64,000 bases of DNA, taken from IMG/VR virus record IMGVR_UViG_3300023174_000036, positions 124,001-188,000 of that record. One strand, 5' to 3'. Below, in pieces: positions 14,265 to 63,999 of the stretch. Every line of letters begins with the position of its first letter. Position 1 is the stretch's first letter. Below the pieces are notes generated by a model. The model saw only the letters and a list, made by a program, of their open reading frames with translations. It was not told the DNA's origin and searched no databases. Both the position numbers and the translations under genes were made by a program.

Positions 14265-14513
14265 TTATTTAGGCTCTACAAAGCCTCCGCCATCCATAGT
14301 AACAGTTATTACTTCTGTATTTTGAGTATTTTTAAGAGCACTGTACAATGTTTCCCAGTCCCTATTCAGTTTATCCAACGTTTCAGTTAGTGCTAGATTT
14401 AATAACCTTGCTTGCTGTATGGTCAATTTAACTTCTTTTTGTTGATTAAGTTCAGCTACTCTAAGTAGCTGAACAAATTGTGTTATTGGAGTTAGATTAA
14501 TAGGATTTTGCAT
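14265..14513 (-). CDS. hypothetical protein
   Basis: ORF in packed operon. Confidence 0.55.
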   Translation of the reverse strand: MQNPINLTPITQFVQLLRVAELNQQKEVKLTIQQARLLNLALTETLDKLNRDWETLYSALKNTQNTEVITVTMDGGGFVEPK

Positions 14514-18338: not shown

Positions 18339-19171
18339 CTTGGGGCAAACTCCTGTTGCATTTTAATATTGTCAAAAAATTCTTTCTTCGCTCCAGGGTC
18401 AGTCTTAAATGTACCTTGTAGCACCGTAGTCTGTGTAAGACTTGAGTGTGCCATAATTCCACGATTCTCACAACACCCATGTATAGCCTGAATATATACG
18501 CCTAAGTTTTCAGCGCCTGTGGCTTTTTGGATCTCTCTAGCAATGTCATTACAAAGTTCCTCCTGGAGAGTACCTCTACGGGCACACCACTGGGCGATAC
18601 GTGTGTACTTGCTGAGTCCGATGAGTTTCTCAGCCGCAATAATACCAATATAAGCAACGCCAGTAACGGGTTGGTGATGATGGCTACACATACTGCGAAG
18701 CTCGCTACGAACAACCAGCATACCTTCGTAGCGATCCTTCGTATCGTTTGGAAATGCTGTTGCGTCTGGTGCTGGTTCATATCTACCTGCCATTATTTCA
18801 TTAAAGTACATCTTGGCAAGTCTACGTGCTGTGCCTTTTGAGTTTGGATCGTTTTCTCGATCAATAAGCAATCGATCGAGCACTAGTTCAAATGCTTCTG
18901 TTGCCTCGTCAATTAGTTTTTCTTTATCGCCTTCGTGAAGATAATCACTGATATTATCTCCAGCCCAAAACCGTTTTTTATCGCGTTTCATTTTAAAACG
19001 AAGATGATCGCCGAGGTATGCTTCTTGATATCCGCCATCTCCAGCCATAGCGTCTAGTGCTGTTTCTTTTTTAATATATACAGGCTTACCTAGTGGCTCG
19101 TATTTGTCCTCAATAAATTCTCGACCATCGGGGGCGTTCATTACCGGATCTGTTTTAAATTCTCTAGTCAT
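18335..19171 (-). CDS. folE: GTP cyclohydrolase I
   Basis: SMCSHHHQP, IGLSKY.RI, QEEL, HGCCENRG. Confidence 0.93.
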   Translation of the reverse strand: MTREFKTDPVMNAPDGREFIEDKYEPLGKPVYIKKETALDAMAGDGGYQEAYLGDHLRFKMKRDKKRFWAGDNISDYLHEGDKEKLIDEATEAFELVLDRLLIDRENDPNSKGTARRLAKMYFNEIMAGRYEPAPDATAFPNDTKDRYEGMLVVRSELRSMCSHHHQPVTGVAYIGIIAAEKLIGLSKYTRIAQWCARRGTLQEELCNDIAREIQKATGAENLGVYIQAIHGCCENRGIMAHSSLTQTTVLQGTFKTDPGAKKEFFDNIKMQQEFAPR

Positions 19172-19189
19172 TATTACTCCTATGTTTGT

Positions 19190-19218
19190 ATTATATAGGT
19201 TTATTTAGGTTTTTGCAA
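19190..19218 (-). promoter_or_regulatory. sigma70-type promoter for folE operon
   Basis: TTGCAA-17-TATAAT then AGGAG RBS. Confidence 0.65.
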
Positions 19219-48071: not shown

Positions 48072-48719
48072 TTAGGCTTTCTCGTTTACGACCCGCTCAA
48101 CTTTGGAAATTACGCCGCTAAGATGCATCTTTGCCATGAGCAAATTATTATCACCTGTAATGTAAAAGTAACTGCCGCCCCAGCTATTGTTTCTTAACAG
48201 CTGAATTTTACAAGATTTAGTTAGTTTTATCTTGGAATTATTACTAGCCCATGTGATAAAAGTGCTGTATTCTTGCGAAGTTTTGCCCAGTGTTACCCTG
48301 TAATCGTATTTTATCTTGGGCAAAATAACTGTGTTTTCTTCTAGAGTTGTGCCGGTTGCCGGCTTGCAAATATACTTTACTCGAGATGCATCCAATTTGA
48401 TTAATTTGTCAACATCTTGTTTGTTATTAGTATACACTGTGACCCATGGAGTTTCTACACGTATTTCTATGTTGTCTAACGCAGAAAGCACATGCTCTAA
48501 CTTGATAGCATATTGCAACTCTTCTTCAGTTTTGATAGTCCAACGTTTTCTAGAATACACATCAGTTTCTAATTTTACATTTTTTATGCGGTCAGCAATA
48601 ACATCGCTGGGTGCGTTTCTAAATAAATGAGCGCCAGAAAATACCAATACAATTTTGTACTGGTACTTTCCGTAAAACAGTTTTTTAGTCTGCTTGAACT
48701 GCATGGTCAGTAGTTTCAA
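48072..48719 (-). CDS. hypothetical protein
   Basis: 215 aa ORF overlapping clpA end. Confidence 0.6.
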   Translation of the reverse strand: MKLLTMQFKQTKKLFYGKYQYKIVLVFSGAHLFRNAPSDVIADRIKNVKLETDVYSRKRWTIKTEEELQYAIKLEHVLSALDNIEIRVETPWVTVYTNNKQDVDKLIKLDASRVKYICKPATGTTLEENTVILPKIKYDYRVTLGKTSQEYSTFITWASNNSKIKLTKSCKIQLLRNNSWGGSYFYITGDNNLLMAKMHLSGVISKVERVVNEKA

Positions 48720-50961
48720 TTGCCAACATTGGCGCTTTAGATGTTTTACCTTTAGCTACCAATGCTATTTTATCTTCACTAATAGAGATAGTAAGCCACC
48801 CGCCGTTCTTGAGGTCTCCAAACAACATCATGCGAGCAAGGTCACGTTTAATTTCCTTGTCAATAACACGTTGTAATGGACGAGCACCCATTTTAGGATC
48901 AAAGCCTTTGGCAATAAGCCAGTTGGTAGCCTCGTTATTAATTTTGATACGAATACCTTTTTCTTTAACTTGATCACGCATTTCGTCAATGAACTTGGTA
49001 ACAACTTTGACCATTGTTTCTTTATTGAGTTTGTTGAATGTAATAACTGCATCAAGTCGATTTCGAAACTCTGGAGTAAAAAACTTTTTCAAGTCTTTAT
49101 CGCTGTAGTCTTTACTTTGTGATCCAAATCCAATAGTATTCTTTTCAGCATCCTGCGCACCTGCATTGGTGGTGAGAATCAATACAATGTTACGGCAATC
49201 AGCTTTTTTACCATTCGAACCAGTAATAAAACCGTTATCCATAATTTGCAACAATACTGTGCTGACATCTGGATGTGACTTTTCAACTTCGTCAAACAAC
49301 AAAACAGCATTAGGGTTTTCTTGAATCTGTGTAATCAACAAGCCAGCATTTTCTTCAAAGCCAACATACCCTGGTGGACTACCAATCAGTTTGGAGATGC
49401 TATGCTTCTCTTGGTATTCTGACATGTCAAACCGCAACAGTTTGACACCCAAGTGCTTGGCCAGCGACTTGGCAGTTTCGGTCTTACCGCAACCAGTTGG
49501 CCCCATGAATATAAATGATCCAACAGGTTTGTTTTCACTCTTAAGTCCTGCCTGTGCAACAATGATCTTGTCCACAATTTCTTCCACAGCGGTGTCTTGT
49601 CCAAACACATCTGCGCTGACATTGTCTTGCAATTTGGAAATACTTGCACTTTCAGTTTCAGAAACTTGTTCTTCAGGAATTTGTACCATCTTAGCAAGTT
49701 CGTATTGAATTTCACGTTCGGTAATGATACGCTCGTCTGCAAGTTTGAGATTGAAACGACTACAAGCCAAGTCAATCAAATCAATGGCCTTATCTGGAAG
49801 TTTCTTATCTGTTTGATATTTTACACTTAGCTTGATTGCTGAATGTAATGCATCGTCTTTAATTTTAACATTATGGAATCCTTCATAGTATTTTTTAATA
49901 CCCTTAAGGATCTGTGTAGTAACTTCAATTGTTGGTTCATCAACAGTAATACGTTGGAAACGACGCATCAATGCACGATCCTTTTCAAAGTGCTTGCGAT
50001 ATTCTTCCCATGTTGTACTAGCAACAACTTTGATATTGCCTTTGCTCAATGCAGGTTTCATCATGTTGGCAAGGTCGTTTGCACTGTTACCAGCAGATCC
50101 TGCACCAGAGATCATGTGTGCTTCGTCGATAAACAACACAGTCTTGCCTTTCTTTTGAAGAGCTTTGATAACTGCTTTAAATCTTTCTTCAAAGTCTCCG
50201 CGATATTTAGATCCAGCTAGCATAGCTGAGATATCTAAATTATAAACAGTGTAGTCTTTTAAGAAGTCTGGAACAGCACCCTTGACAATATTGTAGGCTA
50301 GTCCTTCTGCTATGGCAGTCTTACCTACACCCGGATCTCCAACTAAGATAACATTATTTTTATTACGACGACCCATTGCAAGTGCAATATTTTCCAGTTC
50401 GTCAACACGACCAATAACTGGGTCAATTTTATTTTTTTCTACTTGAGCATTTAAGTTTGTAGTAAACGCCTGCAGAGCTTTACTTGGTTGACCGCCTTCT
50501 TGAGGTTGTTCTTCCTCTTCAGGATCATCCACGCTGTTATTCAAGAAGTCAGCAAACTTGTCTCTATCAATGCCAGCTTTTGCAATATAAAAATATGCCC
50601 AACTGCGTTTTTCACCCATCATTGCAACAAACACATCAGTGGGCTCAATGCGCTGGCGTCCGTTGAACAACACTTGTGTAAACGCACGATTCAACACACG
50701 CTCCACGCTTTGTGTTTTCTTAGGCTTGACCACAACATCTTGCACAGTGATTTCACCGCATTTGTTTTTCAAATAATCAGTTAATTCTGATTTCATTGTT
50801 TCAGGCTTGGAACCAAAACTTTGTAAACAACTAACAAACGATTCTTCAGTCAGCATAGCTAGAAAGATATGTTCGATTGTTAAATATTCATGATGCAGTT
50901 TTTTAGCAGTCTCTAATGCTTTTTCAAATACTGCCTGCAAATTATCACTTGGTTCTACCAT
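48685..50961 (-). CDS. clpA: ATP-dependent Clp protease ATP-binding subunit
   Basis: N-domain HEYLTIEH, GDPGVGKT, FIDEAH, RRFQ, GPTGCGKT, FDMSEY, LLFDEVEK, GARPL. Confidence 0.93.
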   Translation of the reverse strand: MVEPSDNLQAVFEKALETAKKLHHEYLTIEHIFLAMLTEESFVSCLQSFGSKPETMKSELTDYLKNKCGEITVQDVVVKPKKTQSVERVLNRAFTQVLFNGRQRIEPTDVFVAMMGEKRSWAYFYIAKAGIDRDKFADFLNNSVDDPEEEEQPQEGGQPSKALQAFTTNLNAQVEKNKIDPVIGRVDELENIALAMGRRNKNNVILVGDPGVGKTAIAEGLAYNIVKGAVPDFLKDYTVYNLDISAMLAGSKYRGDFEERFKAVIKALQKKGKTVLFIDEAHMISGAGSAGNSANDLANMMKPALSKGNIKVVASTTWEEYRKHFEKDRALMRRFQRITVDEPTIEVTTQILKGIKKYYEGFHNVKIKDDALHSAIKLSVKYQTDKKLPDKAIDLIDLACSRFNLKLADERIITEREIQYELAKMVQIPEEQVSETESASISKLQDNVSADVFGQDTAVEEIVDKIIVAQAGLKSENKPVGSFIFMGPTGCGKTETAKSLAKHLGVKLLRFDMSEYQEKHSISKLIGSPPGYVGFEENAGLLITQIQENPNAVLLFDEVEKSHPDVSTVLLQIMDNGFITGSNGKKADCRNIVLILTTNAGAQDAEKNTIGFGSQSKDYSDKDLKKFFTPEFRNRLDAVITFNKLNKETMVKVVTKFIDEMRDQVKEKGIRIKINNEATNWLIAKGFDPKMGARPLQRVIDKEIKRDLARMMLFGDLKNGGWLTISISEDKIALVAKGKTSKAPMLAIETTDHAVQAD

Positions 50962-55832: not shown

Positions 55833-56423
55833 TTACGCTACCGGAGCCATTCCACCCGCTGGAGCGCCACCTGGCATACCACCACCTGCTGGAGCGCCGC
55901 CCGGCGGAGCCATTCCACCAGGAGCTGCCGGAGTGGTAGGAGCCGCTGTTGCTGGACCCTGAGCTTCACTTGGAGCAGTTCCTGATTGATTTTCGTTTTT
56001 CATCTTGTCCATGTAGCCTTTGTAAACATCAAACGCTACTTTTTTTGGCATTTGAATTTCAACAAGCCAGATAGGCTTACGATCTAATTTGCCTTTTTTA
56101 CTGCCTGGACGAATATCTTCATGTGTGCGGATTTTACGTGGTTCAAGTAAATGACTTTTTTGATATCTTACTTTGCAACCTAAATCTATTAGTCTCTTGC
56201 CTGCATTGGGATCAGGCATCTTGTCTTGAGGCCACATAAAACTAGCAGTTATCCAGTGACGGTCAACTCGAGGCCCATATGCCAACTCGCCGTCAACCCA
56301 GTTTTCAAATACGTAAGTGTCCATCTCGTCGAGAACACGCTCAAAATCTTTTAAAACAGCTAGATTAGAGTTGTTTTCATACAGTGTTTGTATATTGTTA
56401 ATGACGTCTATTATATCATGCAT
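55833..56423 (-). CDS. hypothetical protein with Pro/Gly/Ala tail
   Basis: 196 aa; late-promoter-like TAAATAAGTA upstream. Confidence 0.65.
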   Translation of the reverse strand: MHDIIDVINNIQTLYENNSNLAVLKDFERVLDEMDTYVFENWVDGELAYGPRVDRHWITASFMWPQDKMPDPNAGKRLIDLGCKVRYQKSHLLEPRKIRTHEDIRPGSKKGKLDRKPIWLVEIQMPKKVAFDVYKGYMDKMKNENQSGTAPSEAQGPATAAPTTPAAPGGMAPPGGAPAGGGMPGGAPAGGMAPVA

Positions 56424-56504
56424 TATGGTAAGTCCCAGAAGTTTCTATACTTATTTAGCTGGTTTTAAACGATAACATAACAGTTTATTATTCTGCGGAT
56501 CGAG

Positions 56505-56587
56505 TAAATAAAAATGTAGGACCTCTGTAGTTATCAAGGGCGGTCGCTACAAGTCCTACTTAACCAAGTAAAGTAGGAGCAACTTAG
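56505..56587 (+). promoter_or_regulatory. structured phoH leader with alternative pairings
   Basis: TAAATA then GTAGGAC/GTCCTAC and TGTAG/CTACA stems, or TCCTACTT/AAGTAGGA covering the AGGAG RBS. Confidence 0.55.
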
Positions 56588-57322
56588 ATGAGTAAACAGC
56601 GAGTAACGCAACGAGTGAAAAAACGTTTTACATCAGAAGTTAACATAATTGATTTTCAACCATACTTGCCTCAAAAGAAGCAACGTGTACAATTATCACC
56701 AAGAAACTCTAATCAAGAATTATACGTAAGAAAATTGCAAGATGATGCTAAAAGCATTATTTTAGCCATTGGTCCAGCCGGCACAGGTAAAACTATGCTA
56801 GCCGTACAGAACGGGATTAGATTATTTCAAGAGGGTAAAGTTGACAAGATCATTGTGACAAGACCCGCCGTGAGTGTAGATGAAGATTTGGGATTTTTGC
56901 CAGGAACGCTGAATGAAAAAATGGCGCCTTGGACAAGACCTATATTTGACGTCTTAGGAGAGTATTACCAGCAAAAAGACATTGCAAAGATGTTGGAGGA
57001 TGGAACTATCGAAATAAGCCCGCTCGCTTATATGCGAGGCCGCACATTTAAAAACGCTTACATTATCGCTGACGAATGTCAGAATACAACTGTAAACCAA
57101 ATGAAAATGTTGTTGACCAGACTTGGAGATAATTCTAGAATGGTAGTGACAGGAGATTTAGCTCAAGCAGATAGATTAAACGATAATGGATTAATCAATT
57201 TTTGTAATTTACTTGGAGGGAAGCCAGGATTGAAACATATTGACATTGTTCAATTTAATGCCAAAGATATTGAACGTCATAATGCTGTTAAGGAGGTTTT
57301 AGCATTATACGGTGATTCATAA
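56588..57322 (+). CDS. phoH: PhoH family ATPase
   Basis: GPAGTGKT, TRPAV, LGFLPG, YMRGRTF, DECQN, GDLAQAD. Confidence 0.95.
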   Translation: MSKQRVTQRVKKRFTSEVNIIDFQPYLPQKKQRVQLSPRNSNQELYVRKLQDDAKSIILAIGPAGTGKTMLAVQNGIRLFQEGKVDKIIVTRPAVSVDEDLGFLPGTLNEKMAPWTRPIFDVLGEYYQQKDIAKMLEDGTIEISPLAYMRGRTFKNAYIIADECQNTTVNQMKMLLTRLGDNSRMVVTGDLAQADRLNDNGLINFCNLLGGKPGLKHIDIVQFNAKDIERHNAVKEVLALYGDS

Positions 57323-57347
57323 AAAAAGGACCTTCGGGTCCTTTTTT
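57321..57347. terminator. bidirectional intrinsic terminator
   Basis: AAAAAAAGGACC-TTCG-GGTCCTTTTTT between convergent phoH and dCMP deaminase. Confidence 0.9.
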
Positions 57348-57774
57348 ACAGTTGTGTTACAGTTATTCCTGATCGTTCAAGGAACGTAACACCATCAGTA
57401 CTACGATAACTGTTACGATAGAATACACTGCGAATGCCACTTTGAAATATAAGTTTTGCACAGTCCAAGCATGGGCTATGAGTAACAAACAATACAGCCC
57501 CATCACCAGATTCTGTACTTTTCGCAAGTTTAGCAATAGCATTAGTTTCTGCATGTAACACCTCTGGTTTACTTTTTAATGTAACTGTATCATCACTATG
57601 TTGGATAACGTACTCGCAATCGTTATCCCATCCTGCGGGCATGCCATTATAGCCAATACTGATAATACGATCATCCTTGACCACAATAGCACCAACATGA
57701 AGCCTACGTGCTGAACTAAGTTCAGCAAATCGTTCAGCAACATCCATGTAGGCATTTATGAATTTTTCTTTCAT
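57346..57774 (-). CDS. dCMP deaminase
   Basis: [25 protein letters not shown]. Confidence 0.9.
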
Positions 57775-58094
57775 TCTTCTAGCAAGTCTAATTTATTAGG
57801 TTTGTTATTCCATTCTTCTGCATCAGGTAGCGCAGGTTTACGTTTAGTAATGGTAGGCCATTTTTTAGCAAGCCGTGTATTAAGCTCAGTCCAAAACACA
57901 ACATCAACAGTTTTATCAGTATCGGGAACAATAGCATCGATCGGGCACTCAGGAACGCACACACCACAGTCAATACATTCGTCTGGATCGATAACAAGAA
58001 AGTTAGGACCTTCTTTAAAACAATCAACAGGACAAACTTCTACACAATCAGTATGTTTGCATTTAATACAATTCTCTAATACCAAATATGTCAT
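57771..58094 (-). CDS. fdxA: 7Fe ferredoxin (FdxA type)
   Basis: [30 protein letters not shown]. Confidence 0.92.
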
Positions 58095-59342: not shown

Positions 59343-59903
59343 TCAAATATTAAATGAAAATGTTTTTCTAGGATTATCGTTTAATTTTTGTGGAACTTCA
59401 TGTTCTATCCACGAATTCCACATCACAATCTTTCCAGCTTGAGGCTCAATAAATTTTGTATTTTGTATTTCACCATTAAATACCGATATCGGTTTTGGAT
59501 TAAACAACACTAATGGCGGAACATCTTTGCCCACTTCTAAATAAATGATTCCAGAAAATGTACATCGATGATGCATGTGCCTTCTTAGATAAGCATTTTT
59601 ATTCATAGAACTAAAAAAACCGTAAGGTTTAAATTCTATTTGATTGTAATCCATTTCTGAAGCTTCAGCCAGTTGAACAGCATAGGTCATGATGATCATA
59701 CTCAATGTCTGTTGTACAACCGGATCCGACATTACAACAGGATTAAGATCATCTGATCCCAGCGTTGACGGAAAATTATCAATATTAAGTAAATTGTCCT
59801 TAGTTAGCGACGTATACTTATTACACAGCGGAAGCAATGTGTTTGCCAACTCAATATTTGAGTCCTGAAGCACAAATGTTGGAAATACAGACTCAATTAT
59901 CAT
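59343..59903 (-). CDS. 2OG-Fe(II) oxygenase-like protein
   Basis: HMH...FSGIIYL, MWNSWIEHEVP, RKTFSFN. Confidence 0.75.
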   Translation of the reverse strand: MIIESVFPTFVLQDSNIELANTLLPLCNKYTSLTKDNLLNIDNFPSTLGSDDLNPVVMSDPVVQQTLSMIIMTYAVQLAEASEMDYNQIEFKPYGFFSSMNKNAYLRRHMHHRCTFSGIIYLEVGKDVPPLVLFNPKPISVFNGEIQNTKFIEPQAGKIVMWNSWIEHEVPQKLNDNPRKTFSFNI

Positions 59904-61394: not shown

Positions 61395-62485
61395 TAATTG
61401 TATTCGCCTAAATATCGAAGATACACATTGAGACCGCCGTCAATACTCCATGCTTCTATAACTTTAACGTTATCATTAGTTATGGTTGTTAACACAGCAG
61501 TTGCAGTTGCTTGTACTCCAGTCACCGCAGGAGCTCCTATAGTAACTTGCGGTGGCACAGTAGTCCAGCCGTCTCCGCCATCTGTAACAACTATGCTGTC
61601 AATAGCACATACCAAATCTACTCTTGCTCCTGAACCTATACCGGTTAATGCTGTGACAGTTTTTGAACCAGCCAGTGGTGTTGTCAACGGGCCGTTAACA
61701 CTGACGCTGACGTTGGTAATACCACCTGAACCGTTAACTCCGGTTACTGATAACACAATACTTGTGTCTTGGTTTACAACTAGCAAATCGCCGTTGGCAT
61801 AATTAGAACCAAGTGAACCTGAACTAACAGTTGCTGACAGAACTTTGTATTTGGCAGTTGCGGTTGCAACTGTACCGCCAGCTAATGTTGGACTAGTAAA
61901 TGAAACAGTAGTTGGTGTAATATATTTACTACCTGGTTCAGTAACAGTAATGCTTCTAACACTTTCTCCACCAACTTTAAATCCATAAGTTGTGCTGTTT
62001 GGCAATGTGGGATATGCCACATCATATCTAATAGATCCGCCACCGCTGGTTGCAAATCCTGGTGTTCGCACTCCGTTTTGATCGCTGGCAATCAATACAC
62101 GAATTAATCCCATTTTGCCCGCAGTTGGCCATCCTGTAAATGTTAAAGTTGCATCTCCTGCTAGAATGAATCTCTGCACAGGACCGTTAATTAAATCTAC
62201 ATTAGAAGCTGTTGAAACAGTGCCTCCGCTAAAATACACGCCGTAAAATCTATTGTACAAGCCATTGCTTATAGTGCTACCATTTAGGTCGTTGTTAACA
62301 ACTGCGTTGGTTGCGAGGTTGGCTTTCAACACTGCATTGGTTTGCAATGCGGTAAGTTCAGTTTTGGCAATGGCTAATCCTGCTGAAATAGCTGTAAAAT
62401 TATCACGAAACCCTTGGCTGTTATTGTCAACACCTGCAACTGGGTAAGATGTGTTAATTGTTCCGACATTTATTTGACTGGTCAT
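61394..62485 (-). CDS. tail/baseplate structural protein
   Basis: YPVAGVDNNSQGFRDNF; ITVTEPGSKY...ATATA repeats; late promoter at 62516..62522. Confidence 0.65.
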   Translation of the reverse strand: MTSQINVGTINTSYPVAGVDNNSQGFRDNFTAISAGLAIAKTELTALQTNAVLKANLATNAVVNNDLNGSTISNGLYNRFYGVYFSGGTVSTASNVDLINGPVQRFILAGDATLTFTGWPTAGKMGLIRVLIASDQNGVRTPGFATSGGGSIRYDVAYPTLPNSTTYGFKVGGESVRSITVTEPGSKYITPTTVSFTSPTLAGGTVATATAKYKVLSATVSSGSLGSNYANGDLLVVNQDTSIVLSVTGVNGSGGITNVSVSVNGPLTTPLAGSKTVTALTGIGSGARVDLVCAIDSIVVTDGGDGWTTVPPQVTIGAPAVTGVQATATAVLTTITNDNVKVIEAWSIDGGLNVYLRYLGEYN

Positions 62486-63999
62486 ACTGTTATCCTATCG
62501 TTTCTAAATACAAGATATTTATCGTTAATCGAACCGGTGACAGAATCTATTATGTATCTGTCCACTGTGTAATCTAAAGATTTAAAATCAAATTCGCTGT
62601 GTTGGATATTTAATAAAATATCAGCACTTTTGCCCGCTTCGCAGTAACAAATTGGAATAGCCAACACAAATCCTAATTCTTGACTATTCCCAGGTTGTAT
62701 ACTACGCATCCATAAAGGCATGTAGTTCCTCTCTGTTGCACCAGTATCTTTAATCCTGCTACGCCAATTGGTAATACTGTTTGGAAAATAGGTATTGACA
62801 TTGGGATTTGAAACTTCGTAACCTGTGCTGTCGGCTGTGATTATTGGCTCCGGCCTAATGTTTTCCGGACTGTCGGCACCTAATGAATCCAAAGTTCTAC
62901 TCCAAATATTGGTACTGCTATCGATAGTTATAGTATCGCTAGACAGCCCTGGTAATTGAATATTTCTTGGCAAATATTTGCCGTTTGGCTCTTGCGGGTC
63001 CACAACACTGACATATATCACTTCATATACTGTATCGGTAGTACCGGGCTGAATAGCAACTGCGGATTTAACCGGACCAAAAGCAAATCGTTTTCTTTTG
63101 TGATTCAAACCAATTGCACCAACAAACCTAGCGGCATCTTTGGTTTCTATACCAGCATATACCATCATGTTTAAATCAGTCTGAACTCCAAAATTAGCAT
63201 CATTGGTTCTATAAATGCTACTAGGTGTAAAAATAGAAGTATCGGTAATGAATGATTTCCAAAGAGCTCGTTGTGATTGTTTTAAGAACGGCTTGGTTCT
63301 GATATTGCTGAAACTTATATCGTTTGGGGTATCAATGTACAAGGTAAATGCGCGAGTAGTTGCACTATAGTCATATTGATCTCTAGCTTGCACGGTAAAC
63401 GTATATTGCTTGTCTATACTGGTAGTATCAAAATCAAAAGTTATAAATTTTCTACTTGAGCCAACTGTGTCGTAAAATCTCGTAAGGCCTTTGGATCCAG
63501 AAACAGCATCATAAAATTGATTGACCTTGCCTATAATTTCTCCGTCATAGTTTAGTGATAAACCTGGAGGCAGTGATCCACTTGTTAACGTATAAGAAAT
63601 AATTGCATCAGGTATGGTACTTGAAGCGGCCACATGCAAATTAGAAATAAAATTTGCATTGATGTTGCCCAAGTTGGCATCAGTTAGCCACGTTATTACA
63701 CTGTCAATCTCGCCAATAATACCAATAGTAAATGTTCTGGATGCAGTCGCACTGTCTTGTTTGTCTCCAAATCTAGTAGCAGTGATGGTGAAGTTATAAG
63801 TTTTTGTGATAGCTGGCTGATATGGAACCAGTCCGTATACCGTAGCAGTTTGTATATCAAAATTGGTACCTTTGGGTAACACACTCAAAGTTCCAATATA
63901 AAAACTGGTTCCTGTTGGTATGCTTACTTGTAGCGGTGTTAAGATAGTGAGACGATAACGTCCATTGCCTAAATTCTCCACCACACTGATTTTATAAAG
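62482..63999 (-). CDS. large baseplate/structural protein, C-terminal part (5' end outside window)
   Basis: Frame open to window edge; GSLPPGLSL Ig-like (He_PIG-type) repeat, YTFTVQA. Confidence 0.65.
   Translation of the reverse strand, partial: LYKISVVENLGNGRYRLTILTPLQVSIPTGTSFYIGTLSVLPKGTNFDIQTATVYGLVPYQPAITKTYNFTITATRFGDKQDSATASRTFTIGIIGEIDSVITWLTDANLGNINANFISNLHVAASSTIPDAIISYTLTSGSLPPGLSLNYDGEIIGKVNQFYDAVSGSKGLTRFYDTVGSSRKFITFDFDTTSIDKQYTFTVQARDQYDYSATTRAFTLYIDTPNDISFSNIRTKPFLKQSQRALWKSFITDTSIFTPSSIYRTNDANFGVQTDLNMMVYAGIETKDAARFVGAIGLNHKRKRFAFGPVKSAVAIQPGTTDTVYEVIYVSVVDPQEPNGKYLPRNIQLPGLSSDTITIDSSTNIWSRTLDSLGADSPENIRPEPIITADSTGYEVSNPNVNTYFPNSITNWRSRIKDTGATERNYMPLWMRSIQPGNSQELGFVLAIPICYCEAGKSADILLNIQHSEFDFKSLDYTVDRYIIDSVTGSINDKYLVFRNDRITV

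What the first reader, a model, noticed from the sequence alone, without database searches (positions are those of the whole stretch)
56505..56590. Switch-like RNA leader upstream of phoH
After TAAATA, GTAGGAC(56516-22) pairs with GTCCTAC(56553-59) and TGTAG(56526-30) with CTACA(56547-51), enclosing TTATCAAGGGCGGTCG and leaving the RBS free. Alternatively TCCTACTT(56554-61) pairs with AAGTAGGA(56571-78) and buries AGGAG. Mutually exclusive folds like this are the hallmark of riboswitches and other translational switches. phoH is the only plus-strand gene in 55 kb and has its own terminator.
Basis: partly seen in the sequence, partly recalled or inferred. Interest (0 to 1): 0.62.

Follow-up and report, generated by a model that had tools for sequence, protein, structure and literature searches.

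The report
Conserved two-state phoH mRNA leader
The stretch in front of this giant phage's phoH gene is a strongly conserved, undescribed folded mRNA leader that can pair in two exclusive ways, one hiding the ribosome-binding site, but nothing here shows that it senses a small molecule.

Summary
The window lies in a 356 kb uncultured aquatic jumbo phage, and phoH is a lone plus-strand gene with its own promoters and a bidirectional terminator.

I collected 147 distinct phoH leaders from related viral contigs.
- **Position:** every leader starts 4-6 nt after an invariant TAAATA, which looks like a T4-type late promoter.
- **Outer helix:** 146 of 147 form it, with compensatory changes at 4 of 7 pairs.
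- **Conservation:** the leader is as conserved as codon positions 1-2.
- **Specificity:** it occurs only before phoH, once per genome, and matches no Rfam family.

The 3' arm (56553-61) can pair with the 5' end, leaving the ribosome site free. It can also pair with 56571-78, burying the site.

In this phage the predicted best fold switches from the 5'-arm:inner-copy hairpin to on to off as the transcript grows. Off is favoured at equilibrium behind a barrier of about 13 kcal/mol. The inner hairpin sequence differs between clades, which argues against a ligand pocket.

I favour a ligand-independent switch, set by folding kinetics or by a protein. It is a new RNA family of a known regulatory kind.

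The parts
56464..56491 (+). Sigma-70-like promoter candidate (TTTAAA, 16 nt, TATTAT). It would give a transcript about 18 nt longer than the late one.
   Evidence: Consensus scan, 9 of 12 matches. The TTTATTATT and AAA..ATAAC blocks are moderately conserved in relatives. Function is inferred, not shown.
56452..56457 (-). TAAATA on the minus strand, a late-promoter-like hexamer for the divergent virion structural gene (55833-56423).
   Evidence: ACTTATTTAGCTGG is nearly invariant in relatives. It lies 29 nt upstream of the ATG. The gene matches phrog_12928, virion structural protein.
56505..56510 (+). TAAATA, a T4-type late-promoter-like hexamer. It predicts a transcription start at G56516, 5 nt downstream.
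   Evidence: Conserved in all 94 aligned leaders (TAAGTA in five of them) and present in all distant clades, always 4-6 nt before the 5' arm. The same hexamer sits 11-60 nt upstream of about ten other genes in the window. ATAAATA also precedes phoH in PA5oct, Phosso and Atu_ph07. The start site itself is inferred from the T4 rule (my own knowledge) and is not mapped.
56516..56523 (+). Segment 1, the 5' arm GUAGGAC(C), a Shine-Dalgarno look-alike. It pairs with segment 3 (on state) or with segment 2 (off state).
56526..56531 (+). Segment 1', UGUAGU, the 5' strand of inner helix P2. It pairs with GCUACA 56546-56551 in the on state.
   Evidence: 97.8% paired. One compensatory A-U to G-C change in L209/L228.
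56533..56544 (+). P3, AUC 56533-35 with GGU 56542-44, closing the loop AAGGGC. The GGC is nearly invariant and unexplained.
   Evidence: RNAalifold and the MFE of the 44-nt domain. AUC changes to ACU in L218/L224 and keeps all three pairs with GGU.
56542..56550 (+). Segment 2, GGUCGCUAC, an inner near-copy of the 3' arm. It pairs with segment 1' in the on state or with segment 1 in the off state (with G56546 bulged).
   Evidence: MFE. 98% paired but invariant, so no covariation within the clade. An inner copy complementary to the 5' arm recurs in distant clades with a different sequence (CCUAC with GUAGG, CCUGC with GCAGG); p<0.05 against shuffles in 75% of 59 representatives.
56553..56561 (+). 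Segment 3, (G)UCCUACUU, the anti-Shine-Dalgarno arm shared by the two exclusive helices.
   Evidence: Its variation is almost entirely C-to-U and A-to-G. That gives G.U pairs on the plus-strand RNA with either partner: 54 G.U cells against 9 other mismatches in helix 1.
56571..56579 (+). Segment 4, AAGUAGGAG, containing the ribosome-binding site AGGAG (56575-79). It pairs with segment 3 in the off state.
   Evidence: 98.4% paired. A U-A to A-U compensatory change is seen in 7 sequences (CUACAU/AUGUAG). The hairpin alone is -9.5 kcal/mol, z -3.5.
56588..57322 (+). phoH coding sequence (244 aa plus stop). A single-domain PhoH ATPase with no PIN domain.
   Evidence: Pfam PF02562, E 2.5e-73; phrog_170.
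57322..57347 (.). Bidirectional intrinsic terminator (A7 GGACC UUCG GGUCC U6), shared with the convergent dCMP deaminase gene.
   Evidence: -14.6 kcal/mol, z -5.8 on the plus strand; -13.2 kcal/mol, z -4.1 on the minus strand.

Best explanation
This is the 5' untranslated leader of the phoH mRNA. It begins at or next to the first base made from a T4-type late promoter, and it works as a four-segment translational switch that needs no small-molecule ligand.

**On fold.** Segment 1 (56516-22) pairs with segment 3 (56553-59), and 56526-31 pairs with 56546-51. This makes one long 5'-terminal hairpin that locks away the anti-Shine-Dalgarno arm and leaves AGGAG free.

**Off fold.** Segment 1 re-pairs with the inner copy (56542-50). 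Segment 3 is released and pairs with 56571-78, covering the ribosome-binding site.

**Predicted behaviour in this phage.** The on fold is the best structure while the chain is 44-60 nt long. The off fold becomes best once the ribosome site has been made, and the two are separated by a sizeable refolding barrier. So I expect translation mainly from young transcripts, followed by self-silencing. This is delayed-folding control, of the kind known for the phage MS2 maturation gene. A trans-acting factor such as the PhoH ATPase itself could shift the balance.

**What is shown:** the conservation, the helices and their covariation, the restriction to phoH, and the predicted energetics.

**What is inferred:** the transcription start, any effect on translation, and the trigger.
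For: **The pairings exist.** They are present at the stated coordinates.

**Distribution.**
- 434 phoH relatives were found in viral contigs, and a further 270 around a distant query.
- The core motif scan gave 119 hits. Every hit with readable downstream sequence precedes phoH, apart from one chance partial match.
- A covariance model finds only this one copy in the 356 kb genome (93 bits; the next hit is 20 bits).

**Conservation.** In the leader the commonest base averages 0.89 per column and 40% of columns are invariant. Codon position 3 gives 0.64 and 3%; the promoter region gives 0.73 and 7%.

**Helix 1 plus P2.** 98.3% of cells are paired, and 2 pairs show compensatory change. In distant clades 4 of 7 helix-1 pairs show compensatory change and 95.9% are paired. 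146 of 147 leaders form it.

**Ribosome-site helix.** 98.4% of cells are paired, with a compensatory U-A to A-U change in 7 sequences. Complementarity beyond the Shine-Dalgarno core beats shuffles in most representatives of the window's clade.

**5' arm with inner copy.** It beats shuffles in 75% of 59 representatives, including distant clades where the sequence differs.

**Energetics of the window's leader.**
- The best fold changes with chain length: the 5'-arm:inner-copy hairpin at 36-40 nt, the on fold at 44-60 nt (-19.0), and the off fold from 64 nt (-22).
- At equilibrium P(off helix) is 0.99.
- The best refolding path found has a barrier of about 13.6 kcal/mol.

**Across the clade.** 85 of 106 leaders in the window's clade are predicted to be off at equilibrium.
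Against: - No experiment of any kind exists, and the transcription start is not mapped. RNA-library contigs only show that the sequence is present.
- In 35 of 40 distant-clade leaders the on fold is predicted to dominate at equilibrium, and complementarity between the 3' arm and the ribosome site is patchy or absent. The off state may therefore be an elaboration of this clade. The ancestral role may simply be a 5'-terminal hairpin.
- Within the window's clade the 5'-arm:inner-copy helix is invariant, so it has no covariation support there.
- Nearest-neighbour energies and findpath barriers are rough. The temperatures of the host's habitat are unknown.
- The invariant GGC in the loop is not explained by either fold and could be a contact for a protein or ligand.
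Confidence: 0.5

Rival explanations
1. Protein-operated switch. A phage or host RNA-binding protein recognises the conserved hairpin and sets the on/off balance. The most interesting candidate is the PhoH ATPase encoded just downstream (autoregulation, or the leader as PhoH's RNA partner).
For: - The loop nucleotides GGC, and the P2/P3 sequence, are invariant beyond what pairing alone requires.
- The leader is lineage-specific and occurs only with phoH.
- A 2026 preprint reports lineage-specific structured RNAs next to PIN-PhoH (PhoH2) genes. It cites coupled RNA helicase and ribonuclease activities of mycobacterial PhoH2 (doi 10.64898/2026.10.21.760802).
Against: - This PhoH has no PIN domain.
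- There is no binding evidence.
- The enclosed hairpin differs between clades whose PhoH proteins are still about 60% identical.
- Dual-pairing constraints can explain most of the invariance.
Confidence: 0.2
2. Static elements, not a switch. The long hairpin at the 5' end protects the mRNA from 5'-end-dependent decay, as the ompA-type 5' stem-loop does. The ribosome-site hairpin simply keeps translation low. The shared 3' arm would then be incidental.
For: - The hairpin starts 4-6 nt after TAAATA in every clade, that is, at the predicted first base.
- The 5' end is paired in both folds.
- Distant clades mostly show only the 5' hairpin at equilibrium.
- PA5oct also has a hairpin right after ATAAATA.
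Against: - In the window's clade the ribosome-site hairpin and helix 1 cannot coexist, yet both show compensatory change.
- The L009-type change (A-to-G in the 5' arm with U-to-C in the 3' arm) keeps helix 1 at the cost of an end pair of the ribosome-site helix.
- A second, inner partner for the 5' arm is conserved across clades with different sequences. A plain stabiliser does not need one.
Confidence: 0.17
3. Small-molecule riboswitch. The on-fold hairpin is an aptamer, and ligand binding shifts the balance with the ribosome-site hairpin.
For: The folds are mutually exclusive, with an expression-platform-like ribosome-site hairpin. Within the clade, loop and junction nucleotides are very strongly conserved.
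Against: - No Rfam match at E up to 10 for the window, or up to 1 for eight distant leaders.
- The putative pocket is not conserved. Sister clades keep the outer helix but swap the inside for unrelated hairpins such as UUUCCUGCAAAGGAAA or UGCCUACAUUGGCA.
- The fold is a simple interrupted hairpin without a multi-helix junction.
- No literature report was found.
Confidence: 0.08
4. A DNA-level or transcription-level element. Either the inverted repeats form an operator for a DNA-binding repressor, or helix 1 followed by U residues acts as a transcription attenuator.
For: - The region holds inverted repeats next to two promoters.
- In 84 of 106 leaders of the window's clade a run of 3-6 U follows helix 1.
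Against: - Mismatches are strongly one-sided: 54 G.U against 9 others on the plus-strand RNA. That fits RNA pairing, not a DNA palindrome.
- Compensatory changes keep pairing rather than a half-site consensus.
- In the window only UU follows helix 1, and other clades mostly have 0-1 U.
- The U run matches an A run in the ribosome-site helix.
- Terminator logic would contradict the ribosome-site logic.
Confidence: 0.05

Closest known systems
Delayed-folding control of the phage MS2 maturation (A-protein) gene
   Same: The 5' leader of a phage mRNA contains an upstream segment complementary to the Shine-Dalgarno region. The equilibrium fold hides the ribosome site. A transient fold made during synthesis leaves it open, so only young chains are translated. 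No ligand is involved.
   Different: MS2 is an RNA phage and its leader is a cloverleaf with a long-range pairing. Here a DNA jumbo phage has a four-segment leader in which both the 5' arm and the 3' arm have two partners. The kinetics here are only predicted.
T4 late-gene translational control by mRNA structure (genes e, soc, 49 and I-TevI; cited from my own knowledge)
   Same: T4-type late-promoter context. A hairpin sequesters the ribosome site, and which transcript is made decides whether it is translated.
   Different: In T4 the late promoter lies inside the hairpin, so the late transcript lacks the 5' arm. Here TAAATA lies upstream of all segments, so both candidate transcripts carry the whole element.
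Translational riboswitches with an anti-SD / anti-anti-SD expression platform (for example the SAM-II, SAM-III and preQ1 classes in Rfam)
   Same: An anti-Shine-Dalgarno segment is shared by two exclusive helices, in a compact leader directly upstream of the regulated gene.
   Different: There is no match to any Rfam aptamer, no core conserved across clades, and no candidate ligand.
PhoH2-associated structured ncRNAs in bacteria (bioRxiv 10.64898/2026.10.21.760802)
   Same: Lineage-specific structured RNAs encoded immediately next to genes for PhoH-domain ATPases, with no known family annotation.
   Different: Those RNAs sit beside PIN-PhoH fusion genes in bacteria, and the lead example is a 357-nt multi-stem RNA. 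Here a phage gene encodes a single-domain PhoH, the leader is about 72 nt, and it overlaps the gene's own ribosome site.
5'-terminal stabilising stem-loops (E. coli ompA leader; cited from my own knowledge)
   Same: A hairpin starting at or within a few nucleotides of the predicted 5' end.
   Different: Such stabilisers need no second partner for either arm and no link to the ribosome site.

Membership tests
Any described RNA family (Rfam 15) | A score against a curated covariance model | tested here: not met
   No hit in 56430-56600 at E up to 10. No hit in the leaders of eight distant relatives at E up to 1. The only weak hits lie on the terminators.
Riboswitch (ligand-sensing leader) | An aptamer core, meaning unpaired junction and loop nucleotides, conserved across divergent lineages | tested here: not met
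   The core is conserved within the window's clade. It is replaced by unrelated hairpins in sister clades that keep the outer helix.
Riboswitch (ligand-sensing leader) | An expression platform that competes with the aptamer helix | tested here: met
   The 3' arm 56553-61 is shared by helix 1 and the ribosome-site helix. Both pair in over 98% of cells and both covary.
Riboswitch (ligand-sensing leader) | Direct, specific ligand binding | not testable with these tools
   Needs in-line probing, SHAPE or ITC.
Shine-Dalgarno-sequestering conformational switch / attenuator-type leader | An anti-SD segment complementary to the ribosome site beyond the SD core | tested here: met
   UCCUACUU pairs with AAGUAGGA. 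The duplex energy is -11.0 against a shuffle mean of -5.4 (p 0.013) in the window. p<0.05 in most representatives of the window's clade.
Shine-Dalgarno-sequestering conformational switch / attenuator-type leader | A competitor (anti-anti-SD) for the anti-SD segment, supported by covariation | tested here: met
   Helix 1 shows compensatory changes at 2 of 7 pairs in close relatives and 4 of 7 in distant ones.
Shine-Dalgarno-sequestering conformational switch / attenuator-type leader | A change in translation when the fold changes | not testable with these tools
   Needs reporter fusions or toeprinting.
Delayed-folding (kinetic-trap) control, MS2 type | The equilibrium fold hides the ribosome site, and an earlier-forming fold exposes it | tested here: inconclusive
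   Predicted for the window: on fold at 44-60 nt, off fold from 64 nt, P(off) 0.99, barrier about 13.6 kcal/mol. 85 of 106 leaders in the window's clade are predicted to be off at equilibrium, but only 5 of 40 in other clades. All of this is in silico.
T4-type late promoter | A TATAAATA-like element about 5-6 nt upstream of the start, recurring before late genes | tested here: met
   The TAAATA core is conserved. It recurs 11-60 nt upstream of about ten other genes, including virion structural, holin-like and neighbouring genes. I did not test whether a gp55-type sigma factor is present, and the start site is not mapped.
PhoH2-associated structured ncRNA | Adjacency to a PIN-PhoH fusion gene | tested here: not met
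   The protein has only the PhoH/AAA domains over residues 36-241 of its 244.
Intrinsic terminator / transcription attenuator | A stable stem immediately followed by a run of U | tested here: not met
   Only UU follows helix 1 in the window, and other clades have 0-1 U. The true terminator is at 57322-57347.

The most novel reading that the evidence does not exclude
The leader is the cognate RNA partner of the phage PhoH ATPase. PhoH would bind the conserved hairpin and use ATP to drive the exchange between the two folds, setting its own synthesis. It would be the phage, single-domain counterpart of the structured RNAs recently found beside bacterial PhoH2 genes. It would also give the first concrete RNA substrate for a protein family whose function in phages has stayed unknown, even though phoH is one of the commonest phage auxiliary and marker genes.
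Probability: 0.12. Interest if true: 0.8.

Novelty: new variant of a known kind. Interest (0 to 1): 0.6.

Why it matters
phoH is among the most widespread genes of aquatic phages and is widely used as a diversity marker. Its function and regulation in phages are nevertheless unknown.

This is a compact leader of about 72 nt under nucleotide-level selection as strong as that on the protein. It is present before phoH in hundreds of uncultured jumbo-phage contigs, and it has two evolutionarily maintained folds. That makes phoH regulation directly testable with a short synthetic RNA and a reporter, without culturing the phage.

If the switch is purely kinetic, it adds a DNA-phage example to a mechanism documented mainly in MS2. 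If PhoH acts on it, it would point to an RNA substrate for the family.

Tried and rejected
**Searches that found nothing useful**
- Rfam at permissive thresholds gave nothing in the leader.
- Literature searches found no report of a phage phoH leader. I tried phoH with riboswitch and phage, phoH with structured RNA, and a paper on about ten thousand viral structured RNAs.
- A scan of 185,579 prokaryote genomes for the core motif gave 66 hits. 64 lack the flanking arms and look like chance. The other two are short MAG contigs carrying the phage locus.
- The closest cultured phages are PA5oct, Phosso and Atu_ph07, with PhoH no more than 55% identical. All have ATAAATA before phoH but not this leader, so no published start-site data apply.
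- Metatranscriptome contigs contain the locus with zero differences (X5). One contig spans the divergent promoter region, so DNA carry-over cannot be excluded. Contigs also cannot show transcript ends.

**Ideas considered and dropped**
- An extra pairing of CCUC (56522-25) with the loop GAGG/GGGG. The register shifts between relatives, so I dropped it (reading).
- A leader peptide. The only candidate is a start-stop NUG-UAG at 56514-19. It has no ribosome site and lies at or upstream of the predicted start.
- Repeated GGA motifs as CsrA-type sites. Variants GUAGAAC, GUAGAGA and GUAGUAU lose GGA but keep the pairing.
- A temperature sensor. The relative energies of the two core folds barely change from 4 to 37 C.

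**Housekeeping**
- The promoter/terminator scan missed the obvious terminator, and folding confirmed it.
- The large protein searches, structure prediction and complex prediction were not needed.
- No alternative genetic code was used.

Full report
**1. The observation**

- GTAGGAC is at 56516-22 and GTCCTAC at 56553-59.
- TGTAG is at 56526-30 and CTACA at 56547-51.
- TCCTACTT is at 56554-61 and AAGTAGGA at 56571-78, with AGGAG at 56575-79.
- ATG is at 56588 and TAAATA at 56505-10.

The downstream gene is a 244-aa single-domain PhoH ATPase (Pfam E 2.5e-73). It is the only long plus-strand ORF from about 8.9 kb to the end of the window. It ends in a strong bidirectional terminator at 57322-57347.

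Folding energy alone is only moderately unusual. The 96-nt stretch has z -2.2, the 5' domain z -3.4 and the ribosome-site hairpin z -3.5.

**2. Context**

The window is part of a 356 kb viral record, estimated to be about 96% complete.

Neighbouring genes on the minus strand:
- two virion structural proteins, an endolysin and a holin-like protein on one side of phoH;
- dCMP deaminase, a ferredoxin, a clamp loader, a 2OG oxygenase, a family-B DNA polymerase and a ClpB-like ATPase elsewhere.

No cultured phage has a PhoH more than 55% identical. The nearest are the jumbo phages PA5oct, Phosso and Atu_ph07.

**3. The leader is a conserved, phoH-specific element**

- PhoH relatives occur on 434 viral contigs, and 270 more were found around a distant query.
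- I collected 147 distinct leaders from these.
- A scan for the core motif gave 119 hits, one per locus. Every hit with readable downstream sequence precedes phoH, apart from one chance partial match.
- A covariance model built from 94 leaders finds only this one copy in the phage's own genome (93 bits; the next hit is 20 bits, E 0.14).
- In 98 close relatives the commonest base in the leader averages 0.89 per column, and 40% of columns are invariant. That is similar to codon positions 1 and 2 (0.87 and 0.94). It is far above codon position 3 (0.64, 3% invariant) and the promoter region (0.73, 7% invariant).
- Rfam has nothing here or in distant relatives. I found no paper describing it.

**4. 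Where the RNA starts**

TAAATA is conserved across the leaders (TAAGTA in a few) and always lies 4-6 nt before the 5' arm. The same hexamer sits on the minus strand before the divergent structural gene, and 11-60 nt upstream of about ten other genes. ATAAATA also precedes phoH in PA5oct, Phosso and Atu_ph07.

By the T4 late-promoter rule (TATAAATA at -13 to -6; my own knowledge) the first transcribed base would be G56516, which is the first base of the 5' arm. This is an inference, because the start has not been mapped.

A sigma-70-like promoter candidate further upstream (56464-91) would add about 18 nt to the transcript.

**5. The helices**

*In 93 distinct close relatives:*
- Helix 1 (56516-22 with 56553-59) plus P2 (56526-31 with 56546-51) pair in 98.3% of cells. 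Two pairs show compensatory change: G-C to A-U in L007/L008, and A-U to G-C in the L009 type.
- The ribosome-site helix pairs in 98.4% of cells. It has a U-A to A-U compensatory change in seven sequences (CUACAU/AUGUAG).
- Non-canonical cells in helix 1 are 54 G.U against 9 others. This is the signature of an RNA on the plus strand, not of a DNA palindrome.

*In distant clades:*
- Helix 1 persists with different sequences. Examples are GCAGGG/CCCUGU, GUAGGG/UCCUUGC, GUAGAGA/CUUUAC, ACAGGAC/GUCCUG and GUAGUAU/GUACUAC.
- 4 of 7 pairs show compensatory changes and 95.9% are paired. That alignment was fitted to the model, so it leans slightly towards the structure.

AUC becomes ACU in two sister lineages and keeps all three pairs.

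**6.

The minimum-energy fold of the window is not a free 5' arm plus the ribosome-site hairpin. Instead GUAGGACC pairs with GGUC-G-CUAC (56542-50), an inner near-copy of the 3' arm, at the same time as the ribosome-site hairpin forms.

Within the clade this pairing is invariant, so it carries no covariation. Distant clades also hold an inner copy complementary to their own 5' arm: CCUAC with GUAGG, CCUGC with GCAGG, and CUUUAC with GUAGGG. This complementarity beats shuffles (p<0.05) in 75% of 59 representatives.

So there are four segments and two complete folds.
- **On:** 1:3 plus 1':2.
- **Off:** 1:2 plus 3:4.

Almost every nucleotide from 56516 to 56579 has a partner in both folds. That by itself explains much of the extreme conservation.

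**7. Energetics (predicted only)**

For the window's RNA the best fold changes with chain length.

| Chain length | Best fold | Energy (kcal/mol) |
|---|---|---|
| 36-40 nt | 1:2 hairpin | -12.5 |
| 44-60 nt | on fold | -19.0 (-17.8 at 44 nt) |
| 64 nt and longer | off fold | -22 |

- At equilibrium the off helix has probability 0.99 and helix 1 below 0.01.
- The best refolding path found has a barrier of about 13.6 kcal/mol. By a rough Arrhenius estimate (my own arithmetic and knowledge) that corresponds to minutes, comparable to mRNA lifetimes.
- 85 of 106 leaders in the window's clade are predicted off at equilibrium, and 21 on. In other clades 35 of 40 are on.
- Complementarity between the 3' arm and the ribosome site is significant in most of the window's clade but patchy elsewhere.
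- The relative stability of the two core folds hardly changes between 4 and 37 C.

**8. Interpretation**

The conserved core across all clades is a 5'-terminal interrupted hairpin whose 5' arm has a second, inner partner. The window's clade has added a strong ribosome-site helix that uses the same 3' arm.

The architecture is that of an attenuator-like translational switch. I favour a ligand-independent mode. The on fold forms during synthesis and the RNA then relaxes into the off fold, so translation is confined to young transcripts. This is what is known for the MS2 maturation gene.

A protein could set the balance. PhoH itself is the interesting candidate, given the recent report of lineage-specific structured RNAs beside bacterial PhoH2 genes.

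A classical riboswitch is unlikely because the inside of the hairpin is not conserved between clades. A purely static reading (5' stabiliser plus a weak ribosome-site hairpin) remains possible. It fits distant clades better than it fits this one.

A terminator or attenuator reading fails for the window, because only UU follows helix 1.

**9. Expression**

One lake metatranscriptome holds contigs identical to the window over 56164-56744, 56858-57211 and 57182-57327. This shows the sequence is present in an RNA library. It does not show transcript ends or strand, and one contig spans the divergent promoters, so DNA carry-over is possible.

**10. Verdict**

The 'switch-like leader' reading is supported by comparative evidence. 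The 'riboswitch' reading is not.

It is an undescribed RNA family of a familiar regulatory kind, tied to a gene whose role in phages is an open question.

Noticed in passing
window 57322-57347: Bidirectional intrinsic terminator (A7-GGACC-UUCG-GGUCC-U6) between the convergent phoH and dCMP deaminase genes. The consensus terminator scan missed it, and folding gives z -5.8 on the plus strand and -4.1 on the minus strand.
   Followed up: yes
window, minus strand: hexamers at 14266, 19202, 36488, 43983, 48046, 52297, 53840, 56452, 60672, 62516 (plus-strand coordinate of TATTTA): TAAATA lies 11-60 nt upstream of the start codons of about ten minus-strand genes. This looks like a T4-type late promoter set. 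I did not check for a gp55-type sigma factor in the genome.
   Followed up: partly
window 19171-19202 (-) and 62485-62516 (-): Two other short leaders that follow TAAATA begin with a segment complementary to their own ribosome site: CCUAU...AUAGGAG, and UAUCUU...AGGAUA. Sequestering the ribosome site with the 5' end may be a recurring theme in this phage's late mRNAs. I saw this by eye only.
   Followed up: no
window 56514-56519: A start-stop pair (AUG-UAG, or GUG-UAG / UUG-UAG in relatives) overlaps the first bases of the 5' arm. It has no ribosome site and lies at or before the predicted start, so it is probably meaningless. The UG before UAG is invariant in the clade.
   Followed up: partly
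L325 (contig JBBALS010000393.1, 2316 bp, Flavobacteriales MAG) and L334 (contig JBMOJS010000350.1, 2310 bp, Pseudobdellovibrionaceae MAG): Two short contigs binned into bacterial MAGs carry the complete phage phoH leader. Over the roughly 105 nt shown, L325 is identical to the window. This is most likely phage DNA mis-binned, and at best a weak hint about the host.
   Followed up: partly
L043 and L138 (relatives): These leaders carry GUAGAAC in the 5' arm and AAAGCAGGAG at the ribosome site, with an unchanged 3' arm. Each of the two competing helices therefore loses one pair. This could be a balanced weakening of both folds, or just drift.
   Followed up: no
window 48685-50961 (-), 57771-58094 (-), 59343-59903 (-): The phage encodes a full-length ClpB/ClpA-like double-AAA ATPase (758 aa), a 4Fe-4S ferredoxin with DUF3470, and a 2OG-Fe(II) oxygenase. 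These are auxiliary genes worth a look on their own.
   Followed up: no
window 56536-56541 (loop AAGGGC): The GGC at 56539-41 is almost invariant across the clade (one leader, L014, has GCC) but is unpaired in both folds. Neither fold explains it, so it may be a contact for a protein, a ligand or a tertiary interaction.
   Followed up: no
L347 (PA5oct MK797984.1, locus 400-485): PA5oct keeps the same synteny, with a virion structural gene divergent from phoH. It has ATAAATA followed 5 nt later by a hairpin (GUAAAGAU..AUCUUUAUAC), but no evident anti-Shine-Dalgarno arm.
   Followed up: partly
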